Positions 3,921 through 31,284 of a DNA stretch of 64,000 bases are shown here, one piece after another. The translations under genes and the position numbers were made by a program. The DNA lies in sequence record MN871453.1, one strand, 5' to 3'. The notes under the pieces are model-generated. The model saw nothing but the letters and a program-made list of their open reading frames with translations, did no database searches and was not told the origin of the DNA. The number at the start of each line of letters is the position of its first letter. Position 1 is the first letter of the stretch.

Positions 3921-5165
3921 CTACCCCTTAACGCAGACAATTTGTTTTAAGGTAAACAGGACTTCGACAAGATCATCCTGAGAACGCATGACATCCTCGA
4001 TGTTCTTGTACGCCTTTGGTGTTTCATCGATGACATCTTTATCTTTACGACATTCAACACCCTCTGTATCACGGATCTGGTCCTCTATCGTGAATAGACG
4101 TTTAGCCTCACCACGCGACATAACGCGGCCTGCGCCATGAGAACAGGAACAGAAAGATTCTTGGTTACCTTTCCCACGCACAACAAAAGTTTTAGCGCCC
4201 ATGGAACCGGGTATAATAGCCAGATCGGATGTCCGAGCCCTTACCGCACCTTTACGAGTCACTAGTACGTTTTCATCGAAGTGGTTTTCTAAAGCAACGT
4301 AATTGTGATGACAATTAATTGCTGTCAGTCGATGGGTAAAGGGCTTTTGTAACGTCTTATGAAGAGCCAGTAAAGTTGCGTTCAACATTATCGCGCGATT
4401 TACCGCAGCAAAGTCTTGCGCCCACTGAACAGCCTCTAAATAGTCTTTATAGTAGACGGAACCTTCTGGCAAATAAGCCAGGTCATCATCGACTAAATGA
4501 ATAAAGAAACGTGCCATCTCTTCTTTCGCTTTCTCAATAAAGAAACGCCCGATAGCATTGCCCATACCGCGAGAACCGGAGTGAATAACAATCCAGACGG
4601 AGTCATTCTGATCGAGAGAGAGTTCAACAAAGTGATTACCGGTACCCAACGTTCCTGCGTGAGAAGCGAAACGATTGGCGTTGCGTAAAAGCGTCGGGTA
4701 TTTATCCGTGATCACCTTCAGTCTCTTCTCTAAAGAAATTAATTCTTCTTTCAACTCAGGAGTGAGGTTTTTAGGATCGTTATTACCCCAAGCGCCTCTA
4801 TCATTGGCACCACCGTTATCGGTTCTTCCGTGCGGAATTAACTGTTCGATAGCGTTCCGTAGCCCGGAGAGGTCAGCAGGGAAGTCCTCGCGTTTTAATG
4901 AGGTCTGTTGACCAATTATGCCACAACCAATATCGACACCCAAAGCCGCAGGGATGATTGCCCCTTTGGTGGCAATGACAGAACCGATAGTGGCACCCAT
5001 TCCGTAATGTACGTCAGGCATTACGGCAAGATGTTTAAAGATAAAAGGTAACGTAGTAATATTCCGGAGTTGTTTAGCCGCCTGCTCTTCTACAGGGACA
5101 AATTTCGTCCAGGATTTAATGTTAACGTTTACACCTTCAGTGATAACAATGTTTGACTCTTTCAT
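3921..5165 (-). CDS. rtcB: RtcB RNA ligase (3'-P/2',3'-cP to 5'-OH)
   Basis: MPDVHYG, GVDIGCG, GTLGTGNHF, HSGSRG, CHHNY, HGAGR, DETPKAYK motifs. Confidence 0.95.
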   Translation of the reverse strand: MKESNIVITEGVNVNIKSWTKFVPVEEQAAKQLRNITTLPFIFKHLAVMPDVHYGMGATIGSVIATKGAIIPAALGVDIGCGIIGQQTSLKREDFPADLSGLRNAIEQLIPHGRTDNGGANDRGAWGNNDPKNLTPELKEELISLEKRLKVITDKYPTLLRNANRFASHAGTLGTGNHFVELSLDQNDSVWIVIHSGSRGMGNAIGRFFIEKAKEEMARFFIHLVDDDLAYLPEGSVYYKDYLEAVQWAQDFAAVNRAIMLNATLLALHKTLQKPFTHRLTAINCHHNYVALENHFDENVLVTRKGAVRARTSDLAIIPGSMGAKTFVVRGKGNQESFCSCSHGAGRVMSRGEAKRLFTIEDQIRDTEGVECRKDKDVIDETPKAYKNIEDVMRSQDDLVEVLFTLKQIVCVKG

Positions 5166-5190
5166 TTTCTTTCCTCTTAACAGTTAGTAA

Positions 5191-5754
5191 TTAAAACCAA
5201 TCTTCAATAGCGCGTTCTAAGTCGTTTACGCTACTGCTCAACCACTGACTCTCGTCTGTCCACTCTACCCAAGGGTGAACGACGTCAAGTAGACTACAGT
5301 CTTTCCTGACTTTGATAACACTGAGATCGTGGTTGGTGACGATTTCGTGTTGGGGTAGGGAGAAATAGATCAGTCCGGTTTGTGACGACTCGTCCCAATA
5401 TGTCCCTGTACTACACGGAAGTTTACAACCTTCCTCATTCAGTCCAGAAATCCCATTCTCCCAGAAGGTTTTCACCCAAGGACCGCTTTCATCTAAGTCC
5501 CGCATTGCCCTATCGGCAAAATCATCAAAAGAAAATTGCCAGCGGTCTAAGCAACGTCCTACTTTCTCGAGAAATACTTTACGGATAAGGGGTTCTTCGG
5601 CAAATGTAGGGCTATTGAAAAGCGGTTCATCTTTCCGATTCATCTGTTCACGGATCGTCCCGGTGAGATCCCAACGTTCTGTGCTGTCAGACAACACGGT
5701 CAAGATCTCGTCTACGAGTTCACGGGTCAATACAACAACTTTATCATTCGGCAT
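5191..5754 (-). CDS. hypothetical protein
   Basis: ORF in operon. Confidence 0.65.
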   Translation of the reverse strand: MPNDKVVVLTRELVDEILTVLSDSTERWDLTGTIREQMNRKDEPLFNSPTFAEEPLIRKVFLEKVGRCLDRWQFSFDDFADRAMRDLDESGPWVKTFWENGISGLNEEGCKLPCSTGTYWDESSQTGLIYFSLPQHEIVTNHDLSVIKVRKDCSLLDVVHPWVEWTDESQWLSSSVNDLERAIEDWF

Positions 5755-6280
5755 TTCGCAATTTCCTTCCTATCGATTCTATTTCATCCAACAAGGGTTT
5801 CAACGTATAAAGACCCTCGATCGCTTCTAGCGGGTTATCCGCCCGTAATCGAGACACGGTTTCGCGGTGACGGTCAAACCACTCAGTGTCGGTCTCAGGA
5901 ACTTCTAGTATCTCCCACCACCTCGCTTCCGATTTCTTTTTCTTCCCGAAACGTTTTCCTTCGTGAAGTTGAACCTCTTGAACAACGAATCGGCCTCTTC
6001 CGGTGGTGATCTCTTCAGGTTCCCCAATAGGGGAATACTCTTCAGTAATACTCCCTACCCATTTCTCTTTGAAGTTTATTTCCCAACGGCATTTACTCCC
6101 CCAGGCAAAATAAATCCCTGTGGTTTCGATCAGTAAGACTTTACCGTTTTCAGAAGCGAACGAGGCCGCTGGGGAGATTCCACGACGGTAAAACGTTCGA
6201 TTACCAACGATTAACATTTTACCGTGTTCACTAGAGACGAAAGAGGCCAGAATCATTATTTCATTTTCCTCAGGTTCCAT
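5744..6280 (-). CDS. hypothetical protein
   Basis: ORF in operon. Confidence 0.65.
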   Translation of the reverse strand: MEPEENEIMILASFVSSEHGKMLIVGNRTFYRRGISPAASFASENGKVLLIETTGIYFAWGSKCRWEINFKEKWVGSITEEYSPIGEPEEITTGRGRFVVQEVQLHEGKRFGKKKKSEARWWEILEVPETDTEWFDRHRETVSRLRADNPLEAIEGLYTLKPLLDEIESIGRKLRNAE

Positions 6281-6501
6281 TGCACGATAATTTCTTCGTA
6301 TTTCTCAATGGCCGTTTCTTGGTCATGAAATACCAACCAACCCATTTTACCCGGGTTAGACGTGTAGAGCAGCCCAATCGAAGGTTTAGCGCCTCCCCAG
6401 TTCGTAATGAGTTTTGAGATAGGTGGAGTAACATGTACCAATTCGTCAAAGTCAATGACGTGGTCGTTGATAATAACACTTTTAATTTCTGCGTCAGTCA
6501 T
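6256..6501 (-). CDS. hypothetical protein
   Basis: First gene after early promoter 6548-6556; AAGGAG RBS. Confidence 0.7.
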   Translation of the reverse strand: MTDAEIKSVIINDHVIDFDELVHVTPPISKLITNWGGAKPSIGLLYTSNPGKMGWLVFHDQETAIEKYEEIIVQWNLRKMK

Positions 6502-6597: not shown

Positions 6598-7977
6598 TTA
6601 ACTTACAGCTTTTAATACGTTATAACTTACTGCCTCGACCGGTTTAGTGACGTCGTACGTCCGTAGCGCATTTTCATAGGCTACTGGGTCATGTTTGTTC
6701 AGCATGAAAAGCGCTTGAACAGATGCACCGGGTAAAGGAGAGAAAGGAAGATTACTGGTAGGTTCCGTATCAGGAAACGCCATACTGAAGAACTGTCGAA
6801 TTTCTTTATCGCCTAGTACCTCTACTTCAGCCCTGACATCTATTCTTCCGTCCCGCAGCAGCGCATCGTCAAGTTTCTCAGGATGATTAGTCGTCAGGAA
6901 AACGATAACATCATTCAACCGCAAGACGCCGTCTAACGCGTTGAGGAAATCTGACAAGCTACCGTTTAGGTACTCGTCCATTGCTTTATCATCAGAACTT
7001 TGTTCTTCAACGACGAAAGGGGTATTTTTGAGTTCTTCTGGGTTTTCCGGTTTGTTTCCCTCTTTTAAGTCAATGATAACCTTTTCTTTACTCCGCGCTT
7101 TCGTGAATGAATACGTGTCAATATCCTCGATAATCACAACCCCGCCCGCTGCCCGTTGGAAAAGCGCCTGGTACTGTAATCCACCGGCGGGTTTGAGGAT
7201 ATGAATATCGCGCCCTAACGCCGCCGCTAATGCCGAAATCAAACTGCTTTTTCCGGTGCCCGGTAAACCGTATAACAACACCGTGAACTTATAAGCCAGT
7301 CCTCGTGATTCGTACCAGTCTTTACTCTTATTAAAATCAAAGATAGGGTCGATTAACTCGCGCTGGACTTTATCCGTAACGACTATGGTTTTAAGGTCTC
7401 TTTTCTTCAGTCGGCACAAATAATTCCAACCGTCGGTGGTATTGACAAATGTCCGTATGTTGTCTTTACCCGTATCTTTCAGCATAAACTCATCCATCAG
7501 GTTTAAGATAGGTTTATGACTGCGACCGAATTTACTGATACTAAGACGGTATTTCGAATTACTCGCAGCGTTAGCGTCGATTTCCGTGATAGAGAAAACA
7601 AACACAGTGCCCTTATGGAGAAAGAAATGTGAGCCTACACCAGGGCCGACGGCAGCGGACTCTCCGTTCACATCGCCATCAATAGTTATCGTCCTACTCC
7701 AATGGAACCAGCTATTCTTAGCAAACCATTTCAGAAATGCCCCGTATTGTTCGGAGTTATAATTACTCCAGTTGGTTCCTGAGGTGTTAAAGACCAAACT
7801 GGTAACAAATTGACGTTTGACCCATTGTACTACCGCCTTGGGCGTTTTGATTAACCCCCAACCAATCGCCCCTGATACCGCGATAGAACTCGCGGCGACA
7901 ATCGCATTCTGTGCCATGGGGTAGTCTTTAAAGTTAGAAAGAATATGGTCGTAAAATGACATTAGTTGTTCGAGCAT
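6598..7977 (-). CDS. BCS1-like membrane-anchored AAA ATPase
   Basis: N-terminal TM, GPGVGSHFF segment, YGLPGTGKSS, IIEDID, FLNALDG, TTNHPEKLDDALLRDGRID. Confidence 0.85.
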   Translation of the reverse strand: MLEQLMSFYDHILSNFKDYPMAQNAIVAASSIAVSGAIGWGLIKTPKAVVQWVKRQFVTSLVFNTSGTNWSNYNSEQYGAFLKWFAKNSWFHWSRTITIDGDVNGESAAVGPGVGSHFFLHKGTVFVFSITEIDANAASNSKYRLSISKFGRSHKPILNLMDEFMLKDTGKDNIRTFVNTTDGWNYLCRLKKRDLKTIVVTDKVQRELIDPIFDFNKSKDWYESRGLAYKFTVLLYGLPGTGKSSLISALAAALGRDIHILKPAGGLQYQALFQRAAGGVVIIEDIDTYSFTKARSKEKVIIDLKEGNKPENPEELKNTPFVVEEQSSDDKAMDEYLNGSLSDFLNALDGVLRLNDVIVFLTTNHPEKLDDALLRDGRIDVRAEVEVLGDKEIRQFFSMAFPDTEPTSNLPFSPLPGASVQALFMLNKHDPVAYENALRTYDVTKPVEAVSYNVLKAVS

Positions 7978-8041: not shown

Positions 8042-8069
8042 AAAAGAGGAGGGATTTCCCTCCTCTTTT
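8042..8069 (-). terminator. intrinsic terminator
   Basis: aaaagaggaggg/ccctcctctttt + long U tract. Confidence 0.75.
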
Positions 8070-9048: not shown

Positions 9049-9522
9049 TTAACCCTCGAACCGATAAACAATGATTTCAAGATTGGTATCCTTAAAAGCC
9101 CGCTCAATATTTTGGCGGACCATTTCCCAATCACCACCGGCCAGCCCGCATCCGATTAAAGGAAAACCCACCTTTAACGGTTTCTCTTCCTTTTTGAGAA
9201 TCGAGGCCATTATTTTCATCGCCAGATACTGTGCGCTATAATGCGTTTTATATCCTGGATCTGAATGGTCGTGGTGAAATTGGCCACAAAGATTGAAACC
9301 CCACTGCCCATCCTTTTTGGCGGCGGTTAATTTCCCCAATCTGTTTTTGACAGGGCGTTTGTCGGCAAAGTAAGGCTCGGCTATCCAGGGAAAGACTTCG
9401 AAGATCTTAACGGCGATACCGCTCTTTGCAATCCCAAAACAGTTTACTTGGTGGGCAATGACGTCGACTTCCTTATTAAAGAAAGCTTCAATCAAATCCC
9501 CTTTAATTTCGGTATAGGTCAT
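9049..9522 (-). CDS. macrodomain protein (T4 Tk.4/Poa1p-like ADP-ribose processing)
   Basis: KGDL, HQVNC.G...GIA, FPLIGCGLAGGDW. Confidence 0.88.
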   Translation of the reverse strand: MTYTEIKGDLIEAFFNKEVDVIAHQVNCFGIAKSGIAVKIFEVFPWIAEPYFADKRPVKNRLGKLTAAKKDGQWGFNLCGQFHHDHSDPGYKTHYSAQYLAMKIMASILKKEEKPLKVGFPLIGCGLAGGDWEMVRQNIERAFKDTNLEIIVYRFEG

Positions 9523-11942: not shown

Positions 11943-11969
11943 AAGGTGAGAGGAAAGACCCCTCACCTT
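11943..11969 (-). terminator. hairpin terminator
   Basis: aaggtgag.gg/cc.ctcacctt. Confidence 0.55.
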
Positions 11970-11974: not shown

Positions 11975-12289
11975 TTATTTTTGCCTGATACGGAGTTCGA
12001 GTTTAATCGATAAATCGTCACCGCTAGTTTCATCAAATGAGAGACTCCGCCAGATTCCTATTTCTCCGCCGTACGCGTAGAAATAAATCTCCCTTTCGAA
12101 AATAACGAAGAGCTTCTCGATAATCGCCGTTTCTTCATTCGTAAACGCAAAGGACGGAGAAAGCGACTCCGAACGATGTTTAGGTAGCCCCTGTAACAAT
12201 TCTACGGAATCATTAAACTCCGTTGAAGTAACACCGGAGTGACGAGCGTGACCAACCACAAGACACGTTTCTAAAACGCACGTTGTCAT
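11975..12289 (-). CDS. hypothetical protein
   Basis: Overlaps thyA stop. Confidence 0.6.
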   Translation of the reverse strand: MTTCVLETCLVVGHARHSGVTSTEFNDSVELLQGLPKHRSESLSPSFAFTNEETAIIEKLFVIFEREIYFYAYGGEIGIWRSLSFDETSGDDLSIKLELRIRQK

Positions 12290-13665
12290 ACCGACACCTG
12301 TAATTTAATGGCCGGGTGATGTTTGTACTCAGTGAAGACGAAATCTTCATAGGTGAGTTCAAACAACCCTTTCTTCGGCACCTCTGAGTTATAGTAGTGC
12401 TCAGAGCGAACGTAGCACTCAACCGGTTTGTAAGGCTCGCGAGTTAATTGTAACTTCGCTTCCTCTAACTGATTGTTGTAGATATGGACGTTAGTCAAAT
12501 TACCAACCAGCTTATTGGGCGCCATACCGAGCTCATGAGCAAATGACAGCAACATGAAGGCGTAGAAAGCCTGGTTAAAGGGCTCACCGGTCATTGTGTC
12601 ACAGCTCCGCATACTGTATTTCAAACTCAGCCACTGCGTCGGTACATGGTTCTCCGTCAACCATTCCGCTTTACGCTCAGGGGACATTTTCGGCTGGTCA
12701 CAATGTTCTTCGCTGTAGTAGTCAGACATGTGGTCTTCCCAGAGATCCTGGAAGTACGGGTTAGCGTTGTTCCTGCACCATTTTAACCGCTCGTTCAACG
12801 TCATCTCTTCTACGTAGAACTCTACCAGGAAATGACACGGGGTAAGGCATGGTTTACCCTCCACAATATTTTCCTGCGGCGTAACCTTAACGGTCTTAGT
12901 GCGTGGTACACCATGACTTGCTAAGAACTCTTCGCAGTTATCGGTCTTACCATGATATTCCAGGCGCGGCCAGAAAATAGCATAAAGGTCCGGACTGTGG
13001 GTTTTTAAATGTTCCCACATCTCGTCACTACTGAGAGTAACTTCTTTCGTTTCTTCCGGCATCCAAAGCGGGTTCCACGCCGAGATCAGGATACGACGCG
13101 ATTCCGGATTGTTCCGTAGGAGATCGAGCGCATACGCGATTTGGTCAACGCCCTTCTTCTCCAATGGATTCTCAGAGAAATTTCGCCATGCTGACCCGTA
13201 AGGGGCATTAAGATCACCCGCTTTGTTCACGGTGACCTGGCGAGTACGTGGTACGCCTTTTTCATCTAACCAACGATGACCGTCTTCAACAGGCCGGATG
13301 GAGATCCCTTTGCTGTAAAACTCGATGTGAGCTTCTTTGTTGTTCTCTTCAAGCCACTTCAGACGTTCGTAGTTTTCCAGAGGTACTTCTTTCACTACGT
13401 CAGCTTCTAAACGCCACGGATCCCAGAACTTGACATTATTCTCCACCATGGTATCGAGGTGGAGTTCCCCGTTTAACATTGCTTTGTACTCAAACCACGC
13501 AGATTTACGCGGAACGAACTTCGTTGTGAGCAGAGGGAATTCCCCGGTCGAAAGGTCGTACTTCAGTTTCGCATCGAAAATAGAAATCGTCCCCGTTCCC
13601 GTCCTGTCTCCTCGCTGACGACCGGTTTCGATAATTTCACGTAGTAAATCGAGATACTGTTTCAC
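12286..13665 (-). CDS. thyA: thymidylate synthase with three large inserts
   Basis: DRTGTGT, FPLLTTK, WDPW, PYG..WR, SRR...SAWNP, PCH (Cys277), RSCD...PFN (Asn364), HIYNNQ. Confidence 0.95.
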   Translation of the reverse strand: MKQYLDLLREIIETGRQRGDRTGTGTISIFDAKLKYDLSTGEFPLLTTKFVPRKSAWFEYKAMLNGELHLDTMVENNVKFWDPWRLEADVVKEVPLENYERLKWLEENNKEAHIEFYSKGISIRPVEDGHRWLDEKGVPRTRQVTVNKAGDLNAPYGSAWRNFSENPLEKKGVDQIAYALDLLRNNPESRRILISAWNPLWMPEETKEVTLSSDEMWEHLKTHSPDLYAIFWPRLEYHGKTDNCEEFLASHGVPRTKTVKVTPQENIVEGKPCLTPCHFLVEFYVEEMTLNERLKWCRNNANPYFQDLWEDHMSDYYSEEHCDQPKMSPERKAEWLTENHVPTQWLSLKYSMRSCDTMTGEPFNQAFYAFMLLSFAHELGMAPNKLVGNLTNVHIYNNQLEEAKLQLTREPYKPVECYVRSEHYYNSEVPKKGLFELTYEDFVFTEYKHHPAIKLQVSV

Positions 13666-14134: not shown

Positions 14135-14731
14135 TTATCTACCTGTACGCTTATTTGTCCAAGAAGACAATCGTTTCAAATTATCTCGATGAACCAATAA
14201 ATCACCCCAATTTTTCTCGGGAGAGTTATCACCAGATATAGCTCTCTGGTAGGCATACATAATTTGCTCGTAAGAAACCTCTACAGGCATCCCACCTGTC
14301 GCTGTACAGAATAATGGCATAACGACGTTTTTTATCGCCCGATCTGGAGAAATACGGTTGAAATATTTTATCTGGCAAAAAGCAGCCAACGCCGCGTGAT
14401 ATGCAATATCTTTACTTTTTGTCGGGCTAGGGAATCGCATCGTCGGTGCATAGCACAATTGAACTGCTTCACTCAGTGAAACGGTGATAGCCTGCCCCAC
14501 TGGCATTTCTTTACCCCAGAATTGTTTGATGACCGTTTGGACAGTTTCTTGGGAGCGAGGAAACTTGTCCCTTACTACTTTGTCAAAACCACCGTCCATA
14601 ATACCAAACGAGTTACCGGGTGTAATAATGCAGTCGTAATCTTTACCCGGGACCATCGTTCTGAAATCCCGTTTTTCAAAATTTGGCCAGCTATCAAAGC
14701 CAGATAAATCAACTATCTTCAGATTAAACAT
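14135..14731 (-). CDS. macrodomain protein (second family)
   Basis: DCIITPGNSFGIMDGGFD, APTMRFP, MPLFCTATGG. Confidence 0.88.
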   Translation of the reverse strand: MFNLKIVDLSGFDSWPNFEKRDFRTMVPGKDYDCIITPGNSFGIMDGGFDKVVRDKFPRSQETVQTVIKQFWGKEMPVGQAITVSLSEAVQLCYAPTMRFPSPTKSKDIAYHAALAAFCQIKYFNRISPDRAIKNVVMPLFCTATGGMPVEVSYEQIMYAYQRAISGDNSPEKNWGDLLVHRDNLKRLSSWTNKRTGR

Positions 14732-15680: not shown

Positions 15681-15700
15681 AGACGGAGGAAATCCTCCGT
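15681..15700 (-). terminator. intrinsic terminator
   Basis: gacggagg/cctccgtc + U tract. Confidence 0.7.
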
Positions 15701-15708
15701 CTGATAAA

Positions 15709-16071
15709 TTAACAAATGACCGCGTCTACAAACAGCGCCGACATCGAACGGACTGGCGTAAGCGACTCTTTTAACGTAGGGAAGAATTTACCTTCCGAAC
15801 TGATGAATAAACACGCGCAGTCTACCTGACCACGATTTATTCGCTGCGCCATTGCTAAGGTGTTCGGTAACGGAATGACCTTGATCGAAGCGATCAATTT
15901 CGGTCCGAGGTAGTCAGCAATGACCTCTTTGAATTTCGCGCGGGTACGAGGATCACCGTATACCTTTACGGTCTTACCCTTCATCAGGTTATTCGCAATG
16001 AAAGCGGAATAATGCAACATCGCGGATTCGTTGAAGGTTCCTAACACTTTAATGGACTGGATTCGTTTCAT
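15709..16071 (-). CDS. hypothetical protein
   Basis: Start MKRIQ overlaps upstream stop (ATGA). Confidence 0.6.
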   Translation of the reverse strand: MKRIQSIKVLGTFNESAMLHYSAFIANNLMKGKTVKVYGDPRTRAKFKEVIADYLGPKLIASIKVIPLPNTLAMAQRINRGQVDCACLFISSEGKFFPTLKESLTPVRSMSALFVDAVIC

Positions 16072-16613
16072 TTTGTAAAAACCCAATAAACGTCGTAAAA
16101 TGAAATAGCATGAATTCCCGAGGGGAGATTGTCGATCTCTTCGATATCTTTCATATCGAGTAAATTGACAACTAACCCGGTGGATAATAATCGCTTGAGG
16201 CTATACGCCACCGCACCAAGCGGAATTTCGAAGGTAATCGCCTTTTGACATCTGAAATGGCTGACCAGTTTGCGCGGTTTATCCGCTAACCGTTCGAGAT
16301 AATCTTTATACGTTTCCCCGTCGTGACCACGCAGCGGCCACTGCCAGATAATTCCGTCTGCGGCTACTATCGCCTCCCCTCGAAAACGATAAGGATTTTG
16401 ATATTGCTCCCATTTGAGATACCCCGGTTGGTACATAGAGCCGTGATCAAGGATCTCCAATTCTTTCCCTGCTATGGCTTCATGAATCATTTCTGCAAGG
16501 GCCGGTATGAGAACAGTTTCCCCTGCGGCATTTTTACCAAGAGCGACCTTCTCTCCTTCCACTAAACCGTAGACGTCAGCCGCGTAAGCGCCCCGTTCAA
16601 ACTTAAATTTCAT
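16068..16613 (-). CDS. hypothetical protein
   Basis: Start MKFKF overlaps the kptA stop (ATGA). Confidence 0.65.
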   Translation of the reverse strand: MKFKFERGAYAADVYGLVEGEKVALGKNAAGETVLIPALAEMIHEAIAGKELEILDHGSMYQPGYLKWEQYQNPYRFRGEAIVAADGIIWQWPLRGHDGETYKDYLERLADKPRKLVSHFRCQKAITFEIPLGAVAYSLKRLLSTGLVVNLLDMKDIEEIDNLPSGIHAISFYDVYWVFTK

Positions 16614-17185
16614 TCTTTTTTCTCCTCTATTTTGAAACAACCTACCGGAACATGTTCGACCAGCCAAACCCCGTTCAACGCTTTGTAGAACACGTAGCCG
16701 CGTTCCAATAGTTTCTGGGTATCAATACTCAAGACTACGAGCGACCCTTTCTTAGCGTACCGTATACCCACTAAACGCGCGGTCTCAATGTGGTCAGTTA
16801 AATGAACGAACTGACGCGACCCCGGCGTTAACCCTTCCTGAAAAATGCTCTCTAAATTCCCCGATGCAGTGCCGTGGTAAAGTACCTCAGGCGGTACCTC
16901 TTCATTGAAGGCCATTTCACTTACTGGGAATGAATGTCCCTGTACAGCACGGATAGAAGAAAGATCATCGGATAACCCAAATCGTTTCTTATCGTCCGTC
17001 TCTACAACGCGCATAATTTCCTGTAACGTAACTGACTTATTCTGTTCAGAGAATGCTGCAATCAGGTCGTCGAGTCTGACATAGCCAAGTTCATCAGGCG
17101 TTAATTTCAAAGCTTGAGGACGATGACGTAGAATGAAACACAACGTTTTAGAAAGTTTAATCGGATTATTCACTGACATGAACAC
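16610..17185 (-). CDS. kptA: RNA 2'-phosphotransferase (Tpt1/KptA)
   Basis: ILRH, DDKKRF, IRAVQGHS, LYHGT, RQFVHLT, NGVWLVEHVP. Confidence 0.95.
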   Translation of the reverse strand: MFMSVNNPIKLSKTLCFILRHRPQALKLTPDELGYVRLDDLIAAFSEQNKSVTLQEIMRVVETDDKKRFGLSDDLSSIRAVQGHSFPVSEMAFNEEVPPEVLYHGTASGNLESIFQEGLTPGSRQFVHLTDHIETARLVGIRYAKKGSLVVLSIDTQKLLERGYVFYKALNGVWLVEHVPVGCFKIEEKKE

Positions 17186-17690
17186 TCTTGTTGATGTAAA
17201 TATTCCATGCAGGGCTCACCCAAACCGGTACTTTAAAACCGAGATGTTCTTCTTCTCGATAACCCCAGCCCTCTTTCTCGGTAAATGAAAAGAAACGATC
17301 CCTGCTCTTTTTTAGGTCGTCGTAGTACCCAAACATTTTATGGTCAGTCGCTTCAGCTTTGTATTTCGCATAAAGCATACTACGATAATCGGACTCGAGC
17401 TCGTTGTACTCAACCGGCTCATAACCGGTAAGAATTGTCACCCCGCCTGTTTCATTTTCGGGATAATATTTCAGCCCTTCCCATACGGCAGGAAGAGGAA
17501 CGAAGTCCCCCAATTCCCAGATGTCAAACATTGGTGTCAAGACAGAGCGCGGTTCATCCGGGCAGCAACTGTAAGTCGCATTTCTCATTGCAACGTCTTT
17601 GTCCGGCGCCATGATTAAAAGAACAGTTGCTTCCTGAGAATCGGGAACATCGTAAAACTTCTCACTGGCCAGAAACAGTTTCATGTTCAT
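17166..17690 (-). CDS. hypothetical protein
   Basis: ORF in operon. Confidence 0.6.
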   Translation of the reverse strand: MNMKLFLASEKFYDVPDSQEATVLLIMAPDKDVAMRNATYSCCPDEPRSVLTPMFDIWELGDFVPLPAVWEGLKYYPENETGGVTILTGYEPVEYNELESDYRSMLYAKYKAEATDHKMFGYYDDLKKSRDRFFSFTEKEGWGYREEEHLGFKVPVWVSPAWNIYINKSVHVSE

Positions 17691-18390
17691 CCCCCTGTTT
17701 ATTCAAAAGAAATTGTTGACACTTATTGATAGCCGTCTCTTTATACTTTTCTGCGTGCTCAGCACCGACTGCCGTATAAAAGTTAAGACCTTTAATGTAT
17801 CGAACGTTTCGCACTGTAAACTCTTCTCTGGTCTGTCCGAAACGAACCCCGATTTCCTGATAGAGTCCATCGAAAATCTCTTCGTCCAAATAGGTCATTG
17901 CGTACAGTTGGTCAGCATCACGGATGATGCCAAACAAATAGCGCAATACGGACCCGCCAGGGTACTGTGGGAATGGGTCATCGAAGTCGTAATGCGTGAA
18001 CCCGATCAAAAGCGTGACTAACGTTTTGTCTACTGTCGGAAATTGACGCCAGAACCCGAGTTGCTCAAGGCGTTGAAACGCGTGTTCAATATTCTTCCAG
18101 TCGTTCTTTTCTCCTTGATGACAGAAGTCATGAAGAAGTCCAGCAATAACAGCTGATTCACGATCCTTCTCAGTGAGCCTATAATAGGTCAAGCTGACAT
18201 TTGAAAGTAAGTGACTCACCAGTACCCCTACGCCAATTAAATGGCGTGTAGAGTGGTACGGACGGCTAATATTCTGCTCCTCTACCCATTGCATGATTTT
18301 ACCGTACTGGTTAAAGAATTGACGTCCCCAGATCGGGCTGAAATCCTCTAACGCATACGTGACCCAGAAGCTTGAAAAGTCAGTGTGCAT
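17662..18390 (-). CDS. HD-domain phosphohydrolase
   Basis: PYHSTRH...AGLLHDFCH...IIRDAD. Confidence 0.85.
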   Translation of the reverse strand: MHTDFSSFWVTYALEDFSPIWGRQFFNQYGKIMQWVEEQNISRPYHSTRHLIGVGVLVSHLLSNVSLTYYRLTEKDRESAVIAGLLHDFCHQGEKNDWKNIEHAFQRLEQLGFWRQFPTVDKTLVTLLIGFTHYDFDDPFPQYPGGSVLRYLFGIIRDADQLYAMTYLDEEIFDGLYQEIGVRFGQTREEFTVRNVRYIKGLNFYTAVGAEHAEKYKETAINKCQQFLLNKQGDEHETVSGQ

Positions 18391-19621: not shown

Positions 19622-19662
19622 ACTTGAAAACAAATCCAAAAGAAAAAAGAGAACATAGAACC

Positions 19663-19688
19663 TTCCTCTCTCCCGAAGGAGAGAGGAA
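19663..19688 (-). terminator. intrinsic terminator, UUCG loop
   Basis: ttcctctctcc/ggagagaggaa. Confidence 0.7.
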
Positions 19689-19696
19689 GCGTCAAA

Positions 19697-24198: not shown

Positions 24199-24245
24199 AA
24201 ATTAAACCCTCCTTTCATTCAGAGCAATTGACGAGAAAATAAAAA

Positions 24246-24267
24246 AGGAGAGGCAAAAGCCTCTCCT
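24246..24267 (-). terminator. intrinsic terminator
   Basis: aggagaggc/gcctctcct + U tract. Confidence 0.7.
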
Positions 24268-24272
24268 CTCAT

Positions 24273-25044: not shown

Positions 25045-25734
25045 TTATTTGTTGGTTTTGGTGATATACCACTTCCAAAGGCCGTAGAAAGCATTCATCA
25101 AGAATACTGCCCACTGTGCCACCTGCGCCCATGAACCCGGTTGATTAAGCGCTGGGATCACCCACAGATAAATCGTGACGCAGTTGATAATTATCCAGAG
25201 AATCCATTGCTCTGGCTGCTGTTTAATCATCATCCACATGGCGATGAGCGATGCGACTAAGCAGAATGCGTCTAAAGCAGGAAACGGATCCTGTGTCGTT
25301 TTCAGGTATTCGGTCAGACCATACCAGAAGATAACCCCAACAACCAGATAAGTTATCACGTCACGTAAAGTGATCGTTTTAACCGCTACGTCAGCTTTGG
25401 CTGGAGTTTTGCCCAGGTCTTTCGTCCAGTAATAAATACCGATAAACTGCATGGGAAGGTAAATAGCGTTCAACGCCGCATTGGCATAAAGGCCGGTATT
25501 GTACGAAACAATACCGTAGGTAATTACGCCAATCGTCCCCCAGTAATAATTAGAGACGCGACCCTTCGCCACCAGAATCACGCAGACAACGTTGGTTAGC
25601 GCTGCCGTGAATTCTAACGGACTGGCTTGCCAGCTCCCCAATCCGACGACGATTAACGCTACGATCAGCCAAAAGTATTCGACTTTCTTCCAGTGCGCAA
25701 AGTCAGTGAAAGTTTTCATTACCAATGAGTTCAT
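25045..25734 (-). CDS. pnuC: nicotinamide riboside transporter PnuC
   Basis: LVAKGRVSNYYWG, G...W, PALDAF...SLIAMW.M.K...EQW..W, multi-TM. Confidence 0.92.
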   Translation of the reverse strand: MNSLVMKTFTDFAHWKKVEYFWLIVALIVVGLGSWQASPLEFTAALTNVVCVILVAKGRVSNYYWGTIGVITYGIVSYNTGLYANAALNAIYLPMQFIGIYYWTKDLGKTPAKADVAVKTITLRDVITYLVVGVIFWYGLTEYLKTTQDPFPALDAFCLVASLIAMWMMIKQQPEQWILWIIINCVTIYLWVIPALNQPGSWAQVAQWAVFLMNAFYGLWKWYITKTNK

Positions 25735-25877: not shown

Positions 25878-27089
25878 TCATCCACCCCAATCAGCGGGGT
25901 TCTGATGAGAACCAGCCTCGATGCTTTCTACCATACTCCAATCTTTATCAAAGTTACTACCGCTTACAGCAGGAGGGAACTTATTTGGAATTTCCGGAGC
26001 GCTCTGGCCGGCAGTGCCGTTACCGGATAACAAGTTATCAACCGCTTCACGTGATTGATCTAAACGACCTTTGTAAGAGTCCCCTTTAATGAATACAGTG
26101 CGTCCCCATGGTGTTTGGTTTTTAAATTCCCAAAGCATTTGTTGGAAGAGACCGTCTGTTTTCTCGCGGTCAGGATTCAGCCGAAGACCGTCATCGACCC
26201 ATGGTACTTCCGGCGAAAGAATCAACACGAGATCGTAATGTTCTTCAGCCGCGATAGCAGAAACAATAGGGTTAGGTTTACCCTCGTACAGCCGATGGTA
26301 ATATTCCGTAATGAAGGCGTTCGTATCGATGAAACAGAGTCGATTAGAAGTACGTAATGCTTCCTCCTCCAGCTCTTTGTGACGATACGCAATCAACGGG
26401 TAGTCAGAACTACGGAGAGTCGCTTCCGAACCCGCTAAGACCGTTTCACAGTACGTACGACCGTACTCTTCAACCCAGCTGGTATTGTAGAGTTTGGCAA
26501 GGTTCTTGACGAGGGAACTTTTCCCAGAACTCTCAACACCTAATACGACCACCCGCAAACAATAATCTTTACGGACAATACTCGGGAGATATTCCCAATG
26601 GTCGTAAAGGTTTTCACGGATCATGGTCGCAGAGATGGGGACGCGGGTACGATTGCTGTCAACGATAACGTGTTCTACAAAACCAAGGTGCGTTTTGTAT
26701 TTTTCATCGTAATCCAGCTCGCTACTGAAAATAGCAATGCTCTGCGCCTGACTGTGGTTAGCTGCCAATCTACCCGCCTCGTTGAAAATCTTAGCGCCGA
26801 GCAGAGCAGCATATTCTTTCCAACCGTTAGGGTATTCCGGTACAGAAGCCTCGTCAATGAAATCGATCGTGACGTGTTCTGTATCCGCGTAAGTTTGTTG
26901 CAGCCAGCGCAGACGATTTTTGAAGTTGAGTACCTTTTGGTCTCGTGGCGATTGTTTATCCAGCCAACGTTGGTCGTGGGAAAGAATGACGAGGACATGC
27001 TTAGACTGCACAGCAGCCTCTGTGATTAAGTTGATGTGCCCCAACGTAAGGGGCGCGAATTTACCGATTACTACGCCTAAGTCAAACAT
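25878..27089 (-). CDS. nadR: NadR-type NMN adenylyltransferase / nicotinamide riboside kinase, no HTH
   Basis: GKFAPLTLGH, SATMIR, GVESSGKS, EYGRTY, WVDDGLR. Confidence 0.93.
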   Translation of the reverse strand: MFDLGVVIGKFAPLTLGHINLITEAAVQSKHVLVILSHDQRWLDKQSPRDQKVLNFKNRLRWLQQTYADTEHVTIDFIDEASVPEYPNGWKEYAALLGAKIFNEAGRLAANHSQAQSIAIFSSELDYDEKYKTHLGFVEHVIVDSNRTRVPISATMIRENLYDHWEYLPSIVRKDYCLRVVVLGVESSGKSSLVKNLAKLYNTSWVEEYGRTYCETVLAGSEATLRSSDYPLIAYRHKELEEEALRTSNRLCFIDTNAFITEYYHRLYEGKPNPIVSAIAAEEHYDLVLILSPEVPWVDDGLRLNPDREKTDGLFQQMLWEFKNQTPWGRTVFIKGDSYKGRLDQSREAVDNLLSGNGTAGQSAPEIPNKFPPAVSGSNFDKDWSMVESIEAGSHQNPADWGG

Positions 27090-28964: not shown

Positions 28965-29224
28965 CAGAGATCCTTTGTAGAAAACATTTTTAACCCGTGC
29001 CGATAGTGAACGCGGTTTTTCAATAGATGACCCATCTCAGCACAATTTTTCAGCCTGGTCGCAAGTAACGTTTTTCCCATCTGACGAGGAGCTGAAATCG
29101 TGAGATTACTGTCTAAACCATCAAAATAGGGTTTGGATACTTTAATGAGGAAAATATGGTTGGCGGTGACGGAACTTCTTTTCAGCTTTCCTCTCTGTAT
29201 TTTCAAACATTTTTTCAAGGCCAT
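28964..29224 (-). CDS. hypothetical protein
   Basis: AAGGAG RBS. Confidence 0.6.
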   Translation of the reverse strand: MALKKCLKIQRGKLKRSSVTANHIFLIKVSKPYFDGLDSNLTISAPRQMGKTLLATRLKNCAEMGHLLKNRVHYRHGLKMFSTKDL

Positions 29225-29233
29225 AGCGTCTCC

Positions 29234-29359
29234 TTATTCTAGTGAATCATAGAGCTTCTTACCAATAGCAAACAGTATCTTAAGTATCGCACCGGAGATG
29301 TACCAAGCACCACCGTAACAGAAGATTACGAAAATAACGATTTTCCATTCTACTGGCAT
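29234..29359 (-). CDS. 41-aa single-TM protein (absent from ORF track)
   Basis: Hand-translated MPVEWKIVIFVIFCYGGAWYISGAILKILFAIGKKLYDSLE; GGAGG RBS. Confidence 0.7.
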   Translation of the reverse strand: MPVEWKIVIFVIFCYGGAWYISGAILKILFAIGKKLYDSLE

Positions 29360-29388
29360 AGTACACCTCCGGTATTTAAGAAATAATA

Positions 29389-29418
29389 ACTGAGAGAGGG
29401 CATCACCCCTCTCTCAGT
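29389..29418 (-). terminator. hairpin terminator
   Basis: actgagagaggg/ccctctctcagt. Confidence 0.7.
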
Positions 29419-29421
29419 CGG

Positions 29422-30048: not shown

Positions 30049-30331
30049 TAAGATTCTTCCTCAAGGAAAGTTTCTGACCCAGTTTGAGGGTGCGGATCGG
30101 AAGTTTGATTGACCCACACGCATTGGCGATAATGGTTCCTGTCGGTGTTCCGACGACCGCAGTGAATTCATCGGGATGTTTCTCAATCAACCCGATGCTG
30201 GCGGAGAACAGATCTTCATCGCGCGCGAGCAGATGTAAATCAGCTTCACTTACGATGTCGCCGATGTAAGGGTAATTTGGATTGCGGACATAAGCGACAG
30301 TTGGGCGCTGCTTGACTTTCTTTGCCGACAT
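30041..30331 (-). CDS. hypothetical protein
   Basis: Overlaps sspB stop. Confidence 0.65.
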   Translation of the reverse strand: MSAKKVKQRPTVAYVRNPNYPYIGDIVSEADLHLLARDEDLFSASIGLIEKHPDEFTAVVGTPTGTIIANACGSIKLPIRTLKLGQKLSLRKNLNG

Positions 30332-30759
30332 TATTCCTTCCCTCCGGAGATAACCGAAAATGGGTTTGGTTTCTTAGTTTCTTTTACCGGCTCAGCGGGT
30401 TCATCAGAACGCCCGTCAGCAGTGATGAGTTTTTGCGGGAGTTGAATCATCTGCTCCGGGTTATCGGGGTTAAACATCTGAATGACGGACCCCCACGGGA
30501 AAGTGTCTGAGGCGAGTTTACCCCCGAAACGCCCTTCGAAGAACAACCCTTCATCCAGTGAAGAAAGCTGACAGGAATGCGGAGAAATATTCAGTGTCAA
30601 TACGTGATAGCCCTGCATGTTAGGGACCGGTTTGACGTATTGACGAAGAACGGGATTCACGGTGATTTCGGTACCAAAGACCGTGATGTAAATACGGCTG
30701 CCATTATCGATAAGCCAGCTATAACCTGCATCAAACAACGCTTTATTTAAAGAAGACAT
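30331..30759 (-). CDS. sspB: SspB-like ClpXP adaptor
   Basis: A.YSWLIDNG...LTLNISP...L...LFFEGRFGG......W..V...F..DN aligns by eye to E. coli SspB. Confidence 0.8.
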   Translation of the reverse strand: MSSLNKALFDAGYSWLIDNGSRIYITVFGTEITVNPVLRQYVKPVPNMQGYHVLTLNISPHSCQLSSLDEGLFFEGRFGGKLASDTFPWGSVIQMFNPDNPEQMIQLPQKLITADGRSDEPAEPVKETKKPNPFSVISGGKE

Positions 30760-30789
30760 GTGTTACTCCCGATTGTTATTTAATTACCT

Positions 30790-31284
30790 TCACTCAGGTG
30801 ATATAGATTTTAAAAGCCGTCGAGTTTCTTCCCAAAACTCCACTAACCATTCTCCGCTTTTAGGCGTAACAACTTTAACGTCGTCTTCCCAGACACGCGC
30901 CCCTTTCTCCATTCGCCAGTTACCGAAGACGTAGTAATGGGTAAAAGGTAGGGTTGAATTGACCAACGCTTGGTATTGGTGTTTGTAAGTATTCAGTTTC
31001 GCCAGATTAGCAGCTTTGATAATCGAGAGGAAATCAGGATGATGAACCACTTCCAATTTCTTCCCAAATGCTTTCGCCTCGTTACCGTACAAGCCTCTGA
31101 GGTATTGGTGTTTAAAACCGGTTTTTGCGTAATACCAAAACCCTTCCATACTTTCAAAGTTTCCGTACTCAGGGTGAATGAAAGGTGTCTTTGGAAAGTG
31201 AGAGAGAAAGAACCCGAGACGGTTCTTGGACTTAGAGTAAATGTTGATGTGGTCAATACCATCATTGTTTGGGTTCAAAGTCAT
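30790..31284 (-). CDS. NADAR-like (YbiA/T4 gp30.3-like) protein
   Basis: HINIYSKS...LG.FLS.F...PF.....G.FESMEGFWYY.K, ALVNST.LPFTHYY. Confidence 0.55.
   Translation of the reverse strand: MTLNPNNDGIDHINIYSKSKNRLGFFLSHFPKTPFIHPEYGNFESMEGFWYYAKTGFKHQYLRGLYGNEAKAFGKKLEVVHHPDFLSIIKAANLAKLNTYKHQYQALVNSTLPFTHYYVFGNWRMEKGARVWEDDVKVVTPKSGEWLVEFWEETRRLLKSISPE
30798..30806 (-). promoter_or_regulatory. early promoter CTATATCAC-N5-TG
   Basis: Same motif, upstream of sspB (inside the 3' end of the upstream CDS). Confidence 0.75.

What the first reader, a model, noticed from the sequence alone, without database searches (positions are those of the whole stretch)
3921..31284. Dispersed NAD+/ADP-ribose/RNA-repair counter-defence toolkit in the early region
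Seen: RtcB, two unrelated macrodomains, Tpt1/KptA, PnuC, NadR and a NADAR-like gene within about 27 kb of otherwise unannotatable early genes. Known: hosts defend by depleting NAD+ (Thoeris, Sir2/TIR), ADP-ribosylating DNA (DarT1 on guanine, reversed by NADAR; DarT2 on thymidine, reversed by the DarG macrodomain) and cutting tRNA (PrrC, RloC, PARIS). Inference: these genes form one circuit that imports NR, rebuilds NAD+, spends it on RNA end repair, and clears ADP-ribose products and adducts. Each family is individually known in phages; the full set acting together is the hypothesis.
Basis: partly seen in the sequence, partly recalled or inferred. Interest (0 to 1): 0.72.

Follow-up and report, generated by a model that had tools for sequence, protein, structure and literature searches.

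The report
Scattered NAD and RNA-repair phage genes
A giant Klebsiella phage carries seven real genes for NAD+ salvage, ADP-ribose removal and RNA end repair, but they look like separate, mostly known counter-defence tools and not one wired-together circuit.

Summary
The window is bases 1-64000 of the nucleus-forming jumbo phage KpZh_LPS_45. All seven named genes are present and look intact.

- **RtcB:** 3921-5165.
- **Macrodomain 1:** 9049-9522, TARG1/DarG-like.
- **Macrodomain 2:** 14135-14731, Macro2-type.
- **Tpt1/KptA:** 16610-17185.
- **PnuC:** 25045-25734.
- **NadR-like enzyme:** 25878-27089.
- **NADAR protein:** 30790-31284. It is divergent and recognisable only by fold.

Only PnuC and NadR behave as a module. 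They are adjacent and co-distributed across about 800 phage records. The NadR-like enzyme matches the crystallised Bas30_86 at E 4.5e-142, so the pair is the published NARP3 pathway.

The other genes sit in different hairpin-bounded units and have unrelated distributions. RtcB is a clean 1.27-kb cassette missing from most close relatives, and by established knowledge it uses GTP, not NAD+. Macrodomain 1 lacks the DarG/AdfM catalytic lysine. The true AdfM orthologue, a NadV-Prs pair and a gene annotated as polynucleotide kinase lie elsewhere in the genome.

The general idea of a phage NAD+/ADP-ribose/RNA-repair network was published in 2021-2022. Verdict: observation confirmed, one-circuit reading only partly supported, modest novelty.

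The parts
3921..5165 (-). RtcB RNA ligase (414 aa), no intein. It sits inside a 1269-bp accessory cassette (3919-5187).
   Evidence: PF01139, E 7e-120, profile 1-426/426. The metal-binding and GMP-histidine motifs align with solved RtcBs. In MJ359 the cassette is replaced by 15 bp. Within the clade it occurs only in the KpZh trio and FBKp24.
9049..9522 (-). Macrodomain 1 (157 aa). It belongs to the ALC1/TARG1/DarG-like clade and is a phage-rich subfamily (phrog_335) that lacks the DarG/AdfM catalytic lysine.
   Evidence: OARD1 1e-6 and DarG 1.6e-4. NCBIfam antitoxin_DarG 8e-11. phrog_335 3e-41. Family columns: invariant H24, N27, N77, Q81 and G124-C125-G126; the lysine position is F/Y/H/L in the residues shown (42 of 43 members). 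22% identical to PhiKZ gp104.
14135..14731 (-). Macrodomain 2 (198 aa), Macro2-type, a candidate ADP-ribose-1''-phosphate phosphatase.
   Evidence: Yeast YMR087W (1njr), 5e-6 over residues 31-171. Partial Macro_2 hit at 4e-5, below cut-off. phrog_2613 2e-32. Homologues are annotated Appr-1-p processing or macro in 38 phage records. Clade function taken from PMC6397177.
16610..17185 (-). Tpt1/KptA RNA 2'-phosphotransferase (NAD+-dependent ART fold). It lies in a tightly overlapping 7-gene unit, 19578 to 15709.
   Evidence: PF01885, E 2e-43. NCBIfam PRK00819, 2e-58. Solved Tpt1 7kw8, 2e-39, with the LRH, KKRF, QGHS, HGT and VHL motifs conserved. Present in all 13 clade records.
17662..18390 (-). 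HD-superfamily phosphohydrolase with a class-I cyclic-nucleotide-phosphodiesterase-like metal motif, two genes upstream of Tpt1. It is a candidate only for hydrolysing a cyclic phosphate such as Appr>p or an immune signal.
   Evidence: PDEase_I 2e-4 and HD 5e-3, both below cut-off. phrog_16069 'phosphohydrolase' 6e-25. PDE10A alignment over the YH...H and HD..H.G..N motifs, E 0.03.
25045..25734 (-). PnuC nicotinamide riboside transporter (229 aa), the downstream half of the NARP3 pair.
   Evidence: PF04973, 3e-43. TIGR01528, 3e-35, above cut-off. 802 phage records with the same genus profile as NadR.
25878..27089 (-). NadR-like bifunctional NMN adenylyltransferase / ribosylnicotinamide kinase without the HTH domain (403 aa), the upstream half of the NARP3 pair.
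   Evidence: PDB 9X6F/9X6H (Bas30_86), E 4.5e-142. K10, H18, E80, P84 and G89 are identical at the same numbering (residues named in PMC13464706). The match to PRK08099 starts at profile position 65 of 411.
30790..31284 (-). Divergent NADAR-fold protein (164 aa, phrog_652).
   Evidence: No Pfam or NCBIfam hit. phrog_652 1e-34. The family profile's best PDB hit is NADAR 8bau at E 0.5, spanning the LSNF, S-x-E and AK..G motifs. The AF2 model has pLDDT 96.2. Foldseek top three: YbiA 2b3w (prob 1.0, TM 0.63), then NADAR 8bau and 8bat. Homologues are annotated N-glycosidase, YbiA or DUF1768. One homologue is fused to DUF4326.
8042..8069 (-). Intergenic coding-strand hairpin with a T-run, a putative unit boundary. 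It is one of seven such hairpins: 8069-8042, 11969-11943, 15702-15681, 19689-19662, 24270-24243, 29419-29388 and 33302-33279.
   Evidence: Terminator-like scan: 9-13 bp stems with 6-7 G-C pairs. All lie in gaps between minus-strand ORFs (with the ORF list).

Best explanation
The region is part of the accessory, small-gene arm of a nucleus-forming (chimallivirus) Klebsiella jumbo phage. It holds several independent anti-defence or auxiliary modules that happen to share NAD+/ADP-ribose chemistry.

(1) NadR-like plus PnuC form a NARP3 module. PnuC imports nicotinamide riboside, and the NadR-like enzyme phosphorylates and then adenylylates it to NAD+, which offsets host NADases. A NadV-Prs pair elsewhere in the genome adds a nicotinamide route that can use the same adenylyltransferase.

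(2) The NADAR-fold protein is most likely an ADP-ribose N-glycosidase of the AdfN kind, acting on guanine-linked ADP-ribose on DNA or RNA, or on a soluble derivative.

(3) Tpt1 uses NAD+ to remove RNA 2'-phosphates, or to ADP-ribosylate 5'-phosphate ends. The Macro2-type macrodomain probably dephosphorylates the resulting ADP-ribose-1''-phosphate.

(4) RtcB is an optional cassette that directly reseals tRNA or mRNA cut by metal-independent host RNases, using GTP.

(5) Macrodomain 1 is an enzyme of a phage-rich, lysine-less subfamily whose substrate is unknown.

What is shown: family membership, intact motifs, synteny and distribution. What is inferred: the substrates, the defence targets, and any metabolic coupling. 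NAD+ supply to Tpt1 is chemically plausible, but no genetic linkage supports it.
For: - Identity and context. The window is 100% identical to MN871453.1. The relatives encode a nuclear shell protein, PhuZ and a split RNA polymerase (PMC8386662).
- NARP3. Bas30_86 matches at E 4.5e-142 with the key residues conserved. The two genes are adjacent. NadR is found in 789 phage records and PnuC in 802, with near-identical genus counts, and the genes are adjacent in T5-like and other phages.
- NadV and Prs occur in the same genome.
- NADAR fold.
- Tpt1 and RtcB motifs are intact.
- Macro2-type assignment.
- Independence of the modules. RtcB is a cassette indel. Within the clade RtcB occurs only in the KpZh trio and FBKp24, and macrodomain 2 is missing in Centimanus. 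The genus profiles differ: RtcB has 705 records, mostly Mycobacterium, Bacillus and Listeria phages; Tpt1 has 98, mostly Erwinia; macrodomain 2 has 38, none from Erwinia. Ea35-70 shares only RtcB, ThyA, Tpt1 and one hypothetical protein.
- Seven strong intergenic hairpins separate the genes, and only NadR and PnuC share a unit.
- The true AdfM orthologue lies outside the region.
Against: - In this clade six of the seven genes are conserved and syntenic, and FBKp24 keeps all seven in the same order. Some shared selection on the set therefore cannot be excluded.
- The genes are more clustered than an even spread would give: 7 of at least 11 in 9% of the genome.
- The hairpins are consensus matches, and only some carry a T-run. 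Read-through transcription of the whole same-strand arm remains possible.
- I have no expression or activity data for this phage.
- The distribution counts come from tblastn at E<1e-5, and I compared genus tallies, not per-genome tables.
Confidence: 0.62

Rival explanations
1. First reader's model. The seven genes are one functional circuit: import NR, rebuild NAD+, spend it on RNA end repair, then clear ADP-ribose by-products and adducts.
For: - All seven families are present and look intact.
- The full set is syntenic in FBKp24 at about 79% nucleotide identity.
- Tpt1 consumes NAD+, and a Macro2-type enzyme acts on its by-product.
- The literature already groups these domains in one NAD+-ADPr network (PMC9503650; PMC7824862).
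Against: - By established knowledge RtcB is GTP-dependent and leaves no 2'-phosphate, so it does not connect to NAD+ or to Tpt1.
- RtcB and macrodomain 2 are lost in close relatives that keep the rest.
- Outside the clade there is no co-occurrence except PnuC-NadR.
- The genes lie in separate hairpin-bounded units.
- No 2H esterase is recognisable near Tpt1, and no 2'-phosphate-leaving ligase is named in the relative's annotation.
- Further members (NadV, Prs, the AdfM orthologue, the annotated polynucleotide kinase) are 20-120 kb away.
Confidence: 0.12
2. The RNA enzymes (RtcB, Tpt1) serve maturation of the phage's own interrupted tRNA-like genes, not repair of host-inflicted cuts.
For: - The same genome, outside the window, has two tRNA-like genes that match the Rfam tRNA model end to end above its gathering score. 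They carry 23- and 33-nt insertions in the anticodon loop.
- One insertion fits the canonical 37/38 position and forms its own hairpin.
- The 97-nt gene, insertion included, is about 99% conserved in FBKp24, whose genome is only about 79% identical.
Against: - ARAGORN does not call either gene.
- No splicing endonuclease is named in the relative's annotation.
- MJ359 keeps both genes but lacks RtcB.
- The sequences are too similar for a covariation test.
- They may be tRNA-like decoys or decaying genes.
Confidence: 0.1
3. The NAD+ genes are plain auxiliary metabolism. They raise NAD+ for the phage's own needs during a long, large-burst infection and have no specific counter-defence role.
For: - PnuC-NadR and NadV-Prs are salvage enzymes found widely in medium and large phages (PMC9503650).
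- Nothing in the sequence ties them to a particular host defence.
Against: - A homologous NadR/PnuC pair (NadR about 62% identical in T5-like phages) was shown to restore NAD+ depleted by Sir2-HerA and to permit phage replication (PMC13464706).
- The neighbouring genes are of anti-defence type (NADAR, macrodomains).
Confidence: 0.12

Closest known systems
NARP3 (Bas30_86 NadR-like enzyme plus Bas30_87 PnuC of Escherichia phage TrudiRoth; Sci Adv 2026, PMC13464706)
   Same: A NadR-like enzyme lacking the HTH domain (NMNAT plus RNK) sits directly upstream of a PnuC transporter. It matches the crystal structure sequence at E 4.5e-142, with K10, H18, E80, P84 and G89 conserved. Identity to the NadR of T5-like phages is 62%.
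   Different: The host phage is a roughly 300-kb nucleus-forming myovirus, not a T5-like siphovirus. A 143-nt spacer separates the genes, and two ORFs are inserted there in MJ359. The protein has a C-terminal extension of about 50 residues. The genome also carries NadV plus Prs.
Phage NADAR anti-DarT1 factors (AdfN of T4; NADAR of Bas32 and Bas60; PMC11257639) and the NADAR/YbiA superfamily
   Same: A stand-alone phage protein with the NADAR fold. The N-terminal LSNF and S-x-E motifs and the AK..G[KR] motif align with 8bau.
   Different: It is not detected by the Pfam or NCBIfam models. It belongs to a separate sequence family, phrog_652. The second catalytic position could not be aligned. No activity data exist.
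AdfM (PhiKZ gp104) and the DarG2 macrodomain (PMC13309987)
   Same: Macrodomain 1 falls in the same ALC1/TARG1/DarG clade and keeps the catalytic asparagine.
   Different: The catalytic lysine is replaced by F/Y/H/L in the residues shown for its family (42 of 43 members, none lysine). Identity to gp104 is only 22%. A different gene of the same genome (MN871453.1 186,343-186,783) is the real orthologue: 34% identical, E 5e-26, with the lysine retained.
Yeast tRNA-splicing by-product pathway: Tpt1, then Appr>p, then Appr-1''-p, then ADP-ribose (YMR087W/Poa1)
   Same: Tpt1 plus a Macro2-type macrodomain related to YMR087W.
   Different: No Trl1-type ligase or 2H cyclic phosphodiesterase was found. 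The two genes lie in different putative units. No other Tpt1-bearing phage outside the clade has a macrodomain 2 homologue.
Bacterial and phage RtcB RNA repair ligases
   Same: Full-length family match with all hallmark motifs. It is 72% identical to the RtcB of Erwinia Agricanvirus phages.
   Different: No RtcA, RtcR or archease partner is present. Here it is a dispensable single-gene cassette.
The viral NAD+-ADPr network concept (Iyer, Burroughs, Anantharaman and Aravind 2021 and 2022; PMC7824862, PMC9503650)
   Same: The same domain set (KptA, Macro, NADAR, NadR, NadV, RtcB) and the same proposed roles in jumbo phages.
   Different: Those surveys describe a loose network across viruses. They do not claim an operon-like circuit, and my evidence does not support one here either.

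Membership tests
NARP3 (PnuC + NadR-like) | Two adjacent genes: a NadR-like enzyme with NMNAT and RNK domains but no HTH, and a PnuC-type transporter | tested here: met
   ORFs 25878-27089 and 25045-25734 are on the same strand, 143 nt apart. Domains. The match to PRK08099 starts at profile position 65.
NARP3 (PnuC + NadR-like) | Close homology to Bas30_86, with the catalytic-site residues conserved | tested here: met
   PDB 9X6F, E 4.5e-142. K10, H18, E80, P84 and G89 are identical.
NARP3 (PnuC + NadR-like) | NR uptake and NR-to-NAD+ conversion that restores NAD+ under NADase defence | not testable with these tools
   Shown only for Bas30_86/87 (PMC13464706).
RtcB RNA ligase | Full-length family match with the metal-binding Asp/Cys/His residues and the GMP-accepting His motif | tested here: met
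   PF01139, 1-426/426. The MPDVH, DIGCG, GTGNHF, HSGSRG and CSHGAGR motifs align with solved RtcBs. The roles of these motifs are from established knowledge.
Tpt1/KptA | Family match plus the Arg-His-Arg-Arg catalytic set | tested here: met
   PF01885, 2e-43. LRH, KKRF and the distal Arg region are identical to solved Tpt1s in the alignment. The identity of the tetrad is from established knowledge.
NADAR (DUF1768/YbiA) | Match to the curated sequence model | tested here: not met
   No Pfam or NCBIfam hit at E<=0.01. The family profile against NADAR 8bau gives only E 0.5.
NADAR (DUF1768/YbiA) | NADAR fold | tested here: met
   The pLDDT-96 model has as its top three PDB hits 2b3w (YbiA), 8bau and 8bat, with probabilities 1.0, 1.0 and 0.77. 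All other hits have TM of about 0.15.
NADAR (DUF1768/YbiA) | Conserved catalytic acidic residues (E43 and E125 equivalents of the Phytophthora enzyme) | tested here: inconclusive
   The nearly invariant E47 aligns with the first Glu (residue names from PMC11543638). The second position lies outside the alignable stretch.
DarG2/AdfM-type macrodomain (thymidine-ADP-ribose glycohydrolase) | Catalytic Asn and Lys (N22/K80 in T. aquaticus DarG; N23/K78 in PhiKZ gp104) | tested here: not met
   In macrodomain 1 the Asn is conserved (N27, invariant). The Lys column is Y (29), F (7), H (3) and L (2) in the residues shown (41 of 43 family members), none lysine. The third macrodomain, outside the window, meets both.
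Macro2-type Appr-1''-pase (YMR087W) | Sequence membership of the Macro_2 clade | tested here: inconclusive
   The Pfam Macro_2 hit is partial and below cut-off (23.5 vs 27 bits). 1njr matches at 5e-6 over 141 residues and is the only PDB hit.
Single operon or co-inherited system | Co-transcription and co-occurrence of all members | tested here: not met
   Seven intergenic hairpins separate the genes. RtcB and macrodomain 2 are lost in relatives. The wider distributions are disjoint. Transcription itself was not measured.

The most novel reading that the evidence does not exclude
Two untested possibilities remain open. (a) Macrodomain 1 represents a large, phage-specific, lysine-less macrodomain subfamily (about 2,570 phage records, phrog_335). 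It would have its own catalytic set (H24, N27, N77, Q81) and act on an ADP-ribose-derived adduct or immune signal different from those handled by DarG or AdfM. (b) Tpt1, and RtcB where present, process the phage's own tRNA-like genes that carry 23-33-nt anticodon-loop insertions. That would be protein-dependent tRNA splicing in a bacterial virus.
Probability: 0.15. Interest if true: 0.65.

Novelty: new member of a known kind. Interest (0 to 1): 0.3.

Why it matters
The finding documents that one nucleus-forming Klebsiella jumbo phage lineage stacks several NAD+/ADP-ribose-centred counter-measures:

- two NAD+ salvage routes;
- a NADAR protein;
- three macrodomains of different clades;
- Tpt1;
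- optionally, RtcB.

This fits the view that a phage nucleus shields DNA but leaves cytoplasmic RNA and NAD+ exposed.

The practical gains are better annotation. phrog_652 is a NADAR fold. phrog_335, currently labelled 'phosphatase', is a lysine-less macrodomain. The 'tail protein' label on macrodomain 2 homologues is wrong.

There is also a caution: shared chemistry and proximity do not make a circuit.

Tried and rejected
- **2H phosphoesterase near Tpt1.** I looked for a cyclic phosphodiesterase acting on Appr>p. No ORF in or beside the Tpt1 unit has the double H-x-T/S motif.
- **The 174-aa gene upstream of Tpt1.** It has only 5 representative homologues. The model is good (pLDDT 87), but no PDB fold match exceeds TM of about 0.2.
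- **The 181-aa gene translationally coupled downstream of Tpt1.** Its homologues are restricted to this clade, so I did not model it.
- **Recurrence of the set in Erwinia phage Ea35-70.** This phage has RtcB and Tpt1 24 kb apart, but in its 44-kb region only RtcB, ThyA, Tpt1 and one hypothetical protein are shared.
- **NADAR-like gene next to NARP3 in a T5-like phage (Stitch).** It is not within 12 kb on either side.
- **Host-type promoters.** Counts equal those of shuffled sequence, so they say nothing about timing.
- **RNA features in the window.** There are no Rfam families and no tRNAs in 1-34000.
- **Supplement of PMC9503650.** It is not held as text.
- **Covariation in the interrupted tRNA-like gene.** The sequences are too similar to test.
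- **The 'early region' label.** I could not test it.

Full report
**Identity and setting**

The window is identical to bases 1-64000 of GenBank MN871453.1, 'Serratia phage KpZh_LPS_45', a 299-kb phage isolated on Klebsiella pneumoniae. Two further isolates are identical over the region. Seven more are 94-98% identical: KpLz-2_45, LPKP23, MJ359, KpLz_1_41, KpXa_1 and KpYy_2_45, with KpLz-2_45 held as two records. FBKp24 (two records) and Centimanus are about 79% identical.

The annotated relative MJ359 encodes a nuclear shell protein, PhuZ tubulin and split multisubunit RNA polymerases. The shell and tubulin of FBKp24 were described in print (PMC8386662). The lineage is therefore a nucleus-forming jumbo phage, a chimallivirus.

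All ORFs between 3921 and 31284 are on the minus strand. There are 49 of at least 60 aa that tile the region.

**Checking the seven genes**

- **RtcB (3921-5165).** It matches Pfam PF01139 end to end at E 7e-120. It keeps the metal-binding and GMP-histidine motifs in alignment with solved RtcBs.
- **Tpt1/KptA (16610-17185).** It matches PF01885 at 2e-43, NCBIfam RNA 2'-phosphotransferase at 2e-58 and a solved Tpt1 at 2e-39, with the catalytic motifs conserved.
- **PnuC (25045-25734).** It matches PF04973 at 3e-43 and TIGR01528 above its cut-off.
- **NadR-like protein (25878-27089).** It has the adenylyltransferase and AAA_28 kinase domains and lacks the HTH: its match to E. coli-type NadR starts at profile position 65. 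Its best solved relative, at E 4.5e-142, is 9X6F/9X6H. The source paper identifies these entries as Bas30_86. K10, H18, E80, P84 and G89, which that paper names as functionally important, are identical.
- **Macrodomain 1 (9049-9522).** It falls below Pfam's threshold. It does match OARD1/TARG1 (1e-6), DarG macrodomains (1.6e-4 and 0.011), NCBIfam antitoxin_DarG (8e-11, macro part only) and phrog_335. Dozens of its homologues carry PF01661.
- **Macrodomain 2 (14135-14731).** It gives only a partial, sub-threshold Macro_2 hit. Its single PDB match is yeast YMR087W (1njr; 5e-6 over 141 residues). YMR087W is the one studied member of the Macro2-type clade, an ADP-ribose-1''-phosphate phosphatase of the tRNA-splicing by-product pathway (PMC6397177).
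- **NADAR-like gene (30790-31284).** It has no Pfam or NCBIfam hit.
  - I collected 29 homologues and aligned 26.
  - The family profile's best PDB hit was a NADAR (8bau) at an insignificant E of 0.5.
  - An AlphaFold model from that alignment reached pLDDT 96.
  - Its only meaningful structural matches were E. coli YbiA and two NADAR crystal structures.
  - Some phage homologues are already annotated N-glycosidase, YbiA or DUF1768.

**What is known already**

- The PnuC-NadR pair is the NARP3 pathway, shown to import nicotinamide riboside, make NAD+ and overcome Sir2-HerA (PMC13464706).
- Phage NADARs (AdfN and others) neutralise DarTG1 (PMC11257639).
- A chimallivirus macrodomain, AdfM (PhiKZ gp104), neutralises DarTG2 (PMC13309987).
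- The grouping of KptA, 2H, Macro, NADAR, NadR/NadV and RNA ligases into a viral NAD+-ADPr/RNA-repair network was laid out for jumbo phages and viruses at large in 2021 and 2022 (PMC7824862; PMC9503650).

**Are the seven one circuit?**

*Chemistry.* By established knowledge, RtcB joins 2',3'-cyclic-phosphate or 3'-phosphate ends to 5'-OH ends with GTP and Mn2+ and leaves an ordinary phosphodiester. It neither consumes NAD+ nor creates the 2'-phosphate junction that Tpt1 removes. I found no ligase of the kind that would create such a junction and no 2H phosphoesterase. A gene annotated as polynucleotide kinase lies about 60 kb from the window across the record ends; it has no Pfam match.

*Inheritance within the clade.* RtcB is a clean cassette. 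Window 3919-5187 is replaced by 15 bp in MJ359, between otherwise collinear flanks. RtcB occurs only in the three KpZh isolates and FBKp24. Macrodomain 2 is missing from Centimanus. The other five genes are in all 13 records. FBKp24 keeps all seven in the same order over 31 kb.

*Inheritance beyond the clade.*
- NadR (789 records) and PnuC (802) have nearly identical genus tallies and are adjacent wherever I looked.
- RtcB (705 records) is mainly in Mycobacterium, Bacillus and Listeria phages.
- Tpt1 (98 records) is mainly in Erwinia phages.
- Macrodomain 2 (38 records) is never in Erwinia phages.
- Macrodomain 1 is in 2,574 records and the NADAR-like gene in 513.
- Erwinia phage Ea35-70, which has both RtcB and Tpt1, shares nothing else from the region except thymidylate synthase and one hypothetical protein.

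*Transcription.* Seven strong hairpins on the coding strand have 9-13-bp stems with 6-7 G-C pairs. Each lies in a gap between ORFs, and several are followed by T-runs. They divide the region into about seven units. NadR and PnuC share one unit, and each other toolkit gene sits in a unit of its own. This is inference from consensus matches, not measured transcription.

**Outside the finding's coordinates**

In the same genome I located:
- NadV/Nampt (279,101-280,879) and ribose-phosphate pyrophosphokinase (280,879-281,739). Together with the NadR adenylyltransferase they give a second, nicotinamide-based route to NAD+.
- A gene annotated as polynucleotide kinase, a DHH protein and a second HD protein.
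- A third macrodomain at 186,343-186,783.

The third macrodomain is 34% identical to PhiKZ AdfM (E 5e-26). It matches DarG macrodomains at 1e-19 and retains both the catalytic Asn and Lys. It, and not either window macrodomain, is the AdfM orthologue.

To obtain PhiKZ gp104 I searched the phage collection with the 31-nt guide sequence printed in PMC13309987.

In an alignment of 43 members of macrodomain 1's family, the column that holds the DarG/AdfM lysine is Y (29), F (7), H (3) or L (2) in the residues shown, none of them lysine. H24, N27, N77, Q81 and the GCG motif are invariant. Macrodomain 1 is thus a conserved, probably active enzyme of a distinct subfamily with an unknown substrate.

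**Most likely working**

See the Best explanation section for the full statement. In short:
- NARP3, plus NadV-Prs, keeps NAD+ up.
- The NADAR-fold protein and the distant AdfM orthologue remove base-linked ADP-ribose.
- Tpt1 with the Macro2-type enzyme handles RNA 2'-phosphate or 5'-phosphate chemistry and its by-product.
- RtcB, where present, reseals cut RNA.

Metabolic coupling, with NAD+ supply feeding Tpt1, is plausible but inferred.

**A lead noticed late**

The genome's tRNA cluster, outside the window, contains two tRNA-like genes of 97 and 103 nt. They match the Rfam tRNA model end to end above its gathering score but carry 23- and 33-nt insertions in the anticodon loop. ARAGORN does not call them.

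The 97-nt gene, insertion included, is almost invariant in FBKp24 and recognisable in Centimanus. Their presence does not track RtcB. I list this as a rival reading of low probability.

**Dead ends**

These are listed under 'tried and rejected'.

The OARD1 fragment largely repeated the alignment printed.

**Verdict**

The finding is a new member of known kinds and of modest interest.

Noticed in passing
window 3919-5187: RtcB sits in a 1269-bp single-gene cassette that is replaced by 15 bp in MJ359. The same stretch of MJ359 has two small insertions of its own, so this arm is a mosaic of gene-sized indels. RtcB homologues in some Pseudomonas jumbo phages are split over 2.2 kb (intein or intron), and the best NCBIfam model is an intein-containing RtcB.
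   Followed up: partly
window 17662-18390: An HD-superfamily protein keeps the class-I cyclic-nucleotide phosphodiesterase metal motifs (YH..H and HD.xH.G..N) and lies two genes upstream of Tpt1 in an overlapping 7-gene unit. It could hydrolyse a cyclic phosphate or a nucleotide immune signal. The support is weak (E 2e-4 to 0.03).
   Followed up: partly
window 12286-13665: The thymidylate synthase is 459 aa and matches the Pfam model in two stretches, which implies a large internal insertion relative to ordinary ThyA.
   Followed up: no
window 8042-8069, 11943-11969, 15681-15702, 19662-19689, 24243-24270, 29388-29419, 33279-33302: A family of strong hairpins with GAGAGG/CCTCTC-type arms lies on the coding strand, each in an intergenic gap. 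They are probably terminators or processing sites that define units.
   Followed up: partly
MN871453.1 279,101-281,739 (locus L012 17102-19740), outside the window: Adjacent NadV/Nampt and ribose-phosphate pyrophosphokinase genes, downstream of a DHFR gene. They provide a second NAD+ salvage route in the same phage.
   Followed up: yes
MN871453.1 186,343-186,783 (locus L013 21344-21784), outside the window: A third macrodomain, the true orthologue of PhiKZ AdfM/DarG2 (34% identity, catalytic Asn and Lys kept).
   Followed up: yes
MN871453.1 172,403-172,505 and 173,026-173,122 (locus L013 7404-7506 and 8027-8123), outside the window: Two tRNA-like genes carry 33- and 23-nt insertions in the anticodon loop. 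They score above the Rfam tRNA gathering score but are not called by ARAGORN. The 97-nt gene is conserved, insertion included, in FBKp24.
   Followed up: partly
window 17166-17690 and 16068-16613: The two genes that overlap Tpt1 on either side are lineage-restricted orphans. The 174-aa protein folds confidently (pLDDT 87) but has no PDB fold match.
   Followed up: yes
window 44-1360 and 6598-7977: Two AAA+ ATPases flank the RtcB area, one with a BCS1 N-terminal domain. The first has two paralogues elsewhere in the genome (L013 14900-17140).
   Followed up: no
window 14135-14731 and its homologues in other phages: Homologues of macrodomain 2 are widely annotated 'tail protein' or 'tail assembly-like', and macrodomain 1 homologues 'phosphatase'. 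These labels look like inherited misannotation of macrodomains.
   Followed up: partly
window 30331-30759: An SspB-like protein is encoded directly downstream of the NADAR-fold gene. An SspB-like gene also lies in the RtcB neighbourhood of Erwinia phage Ea35-70.
   Followed up: no
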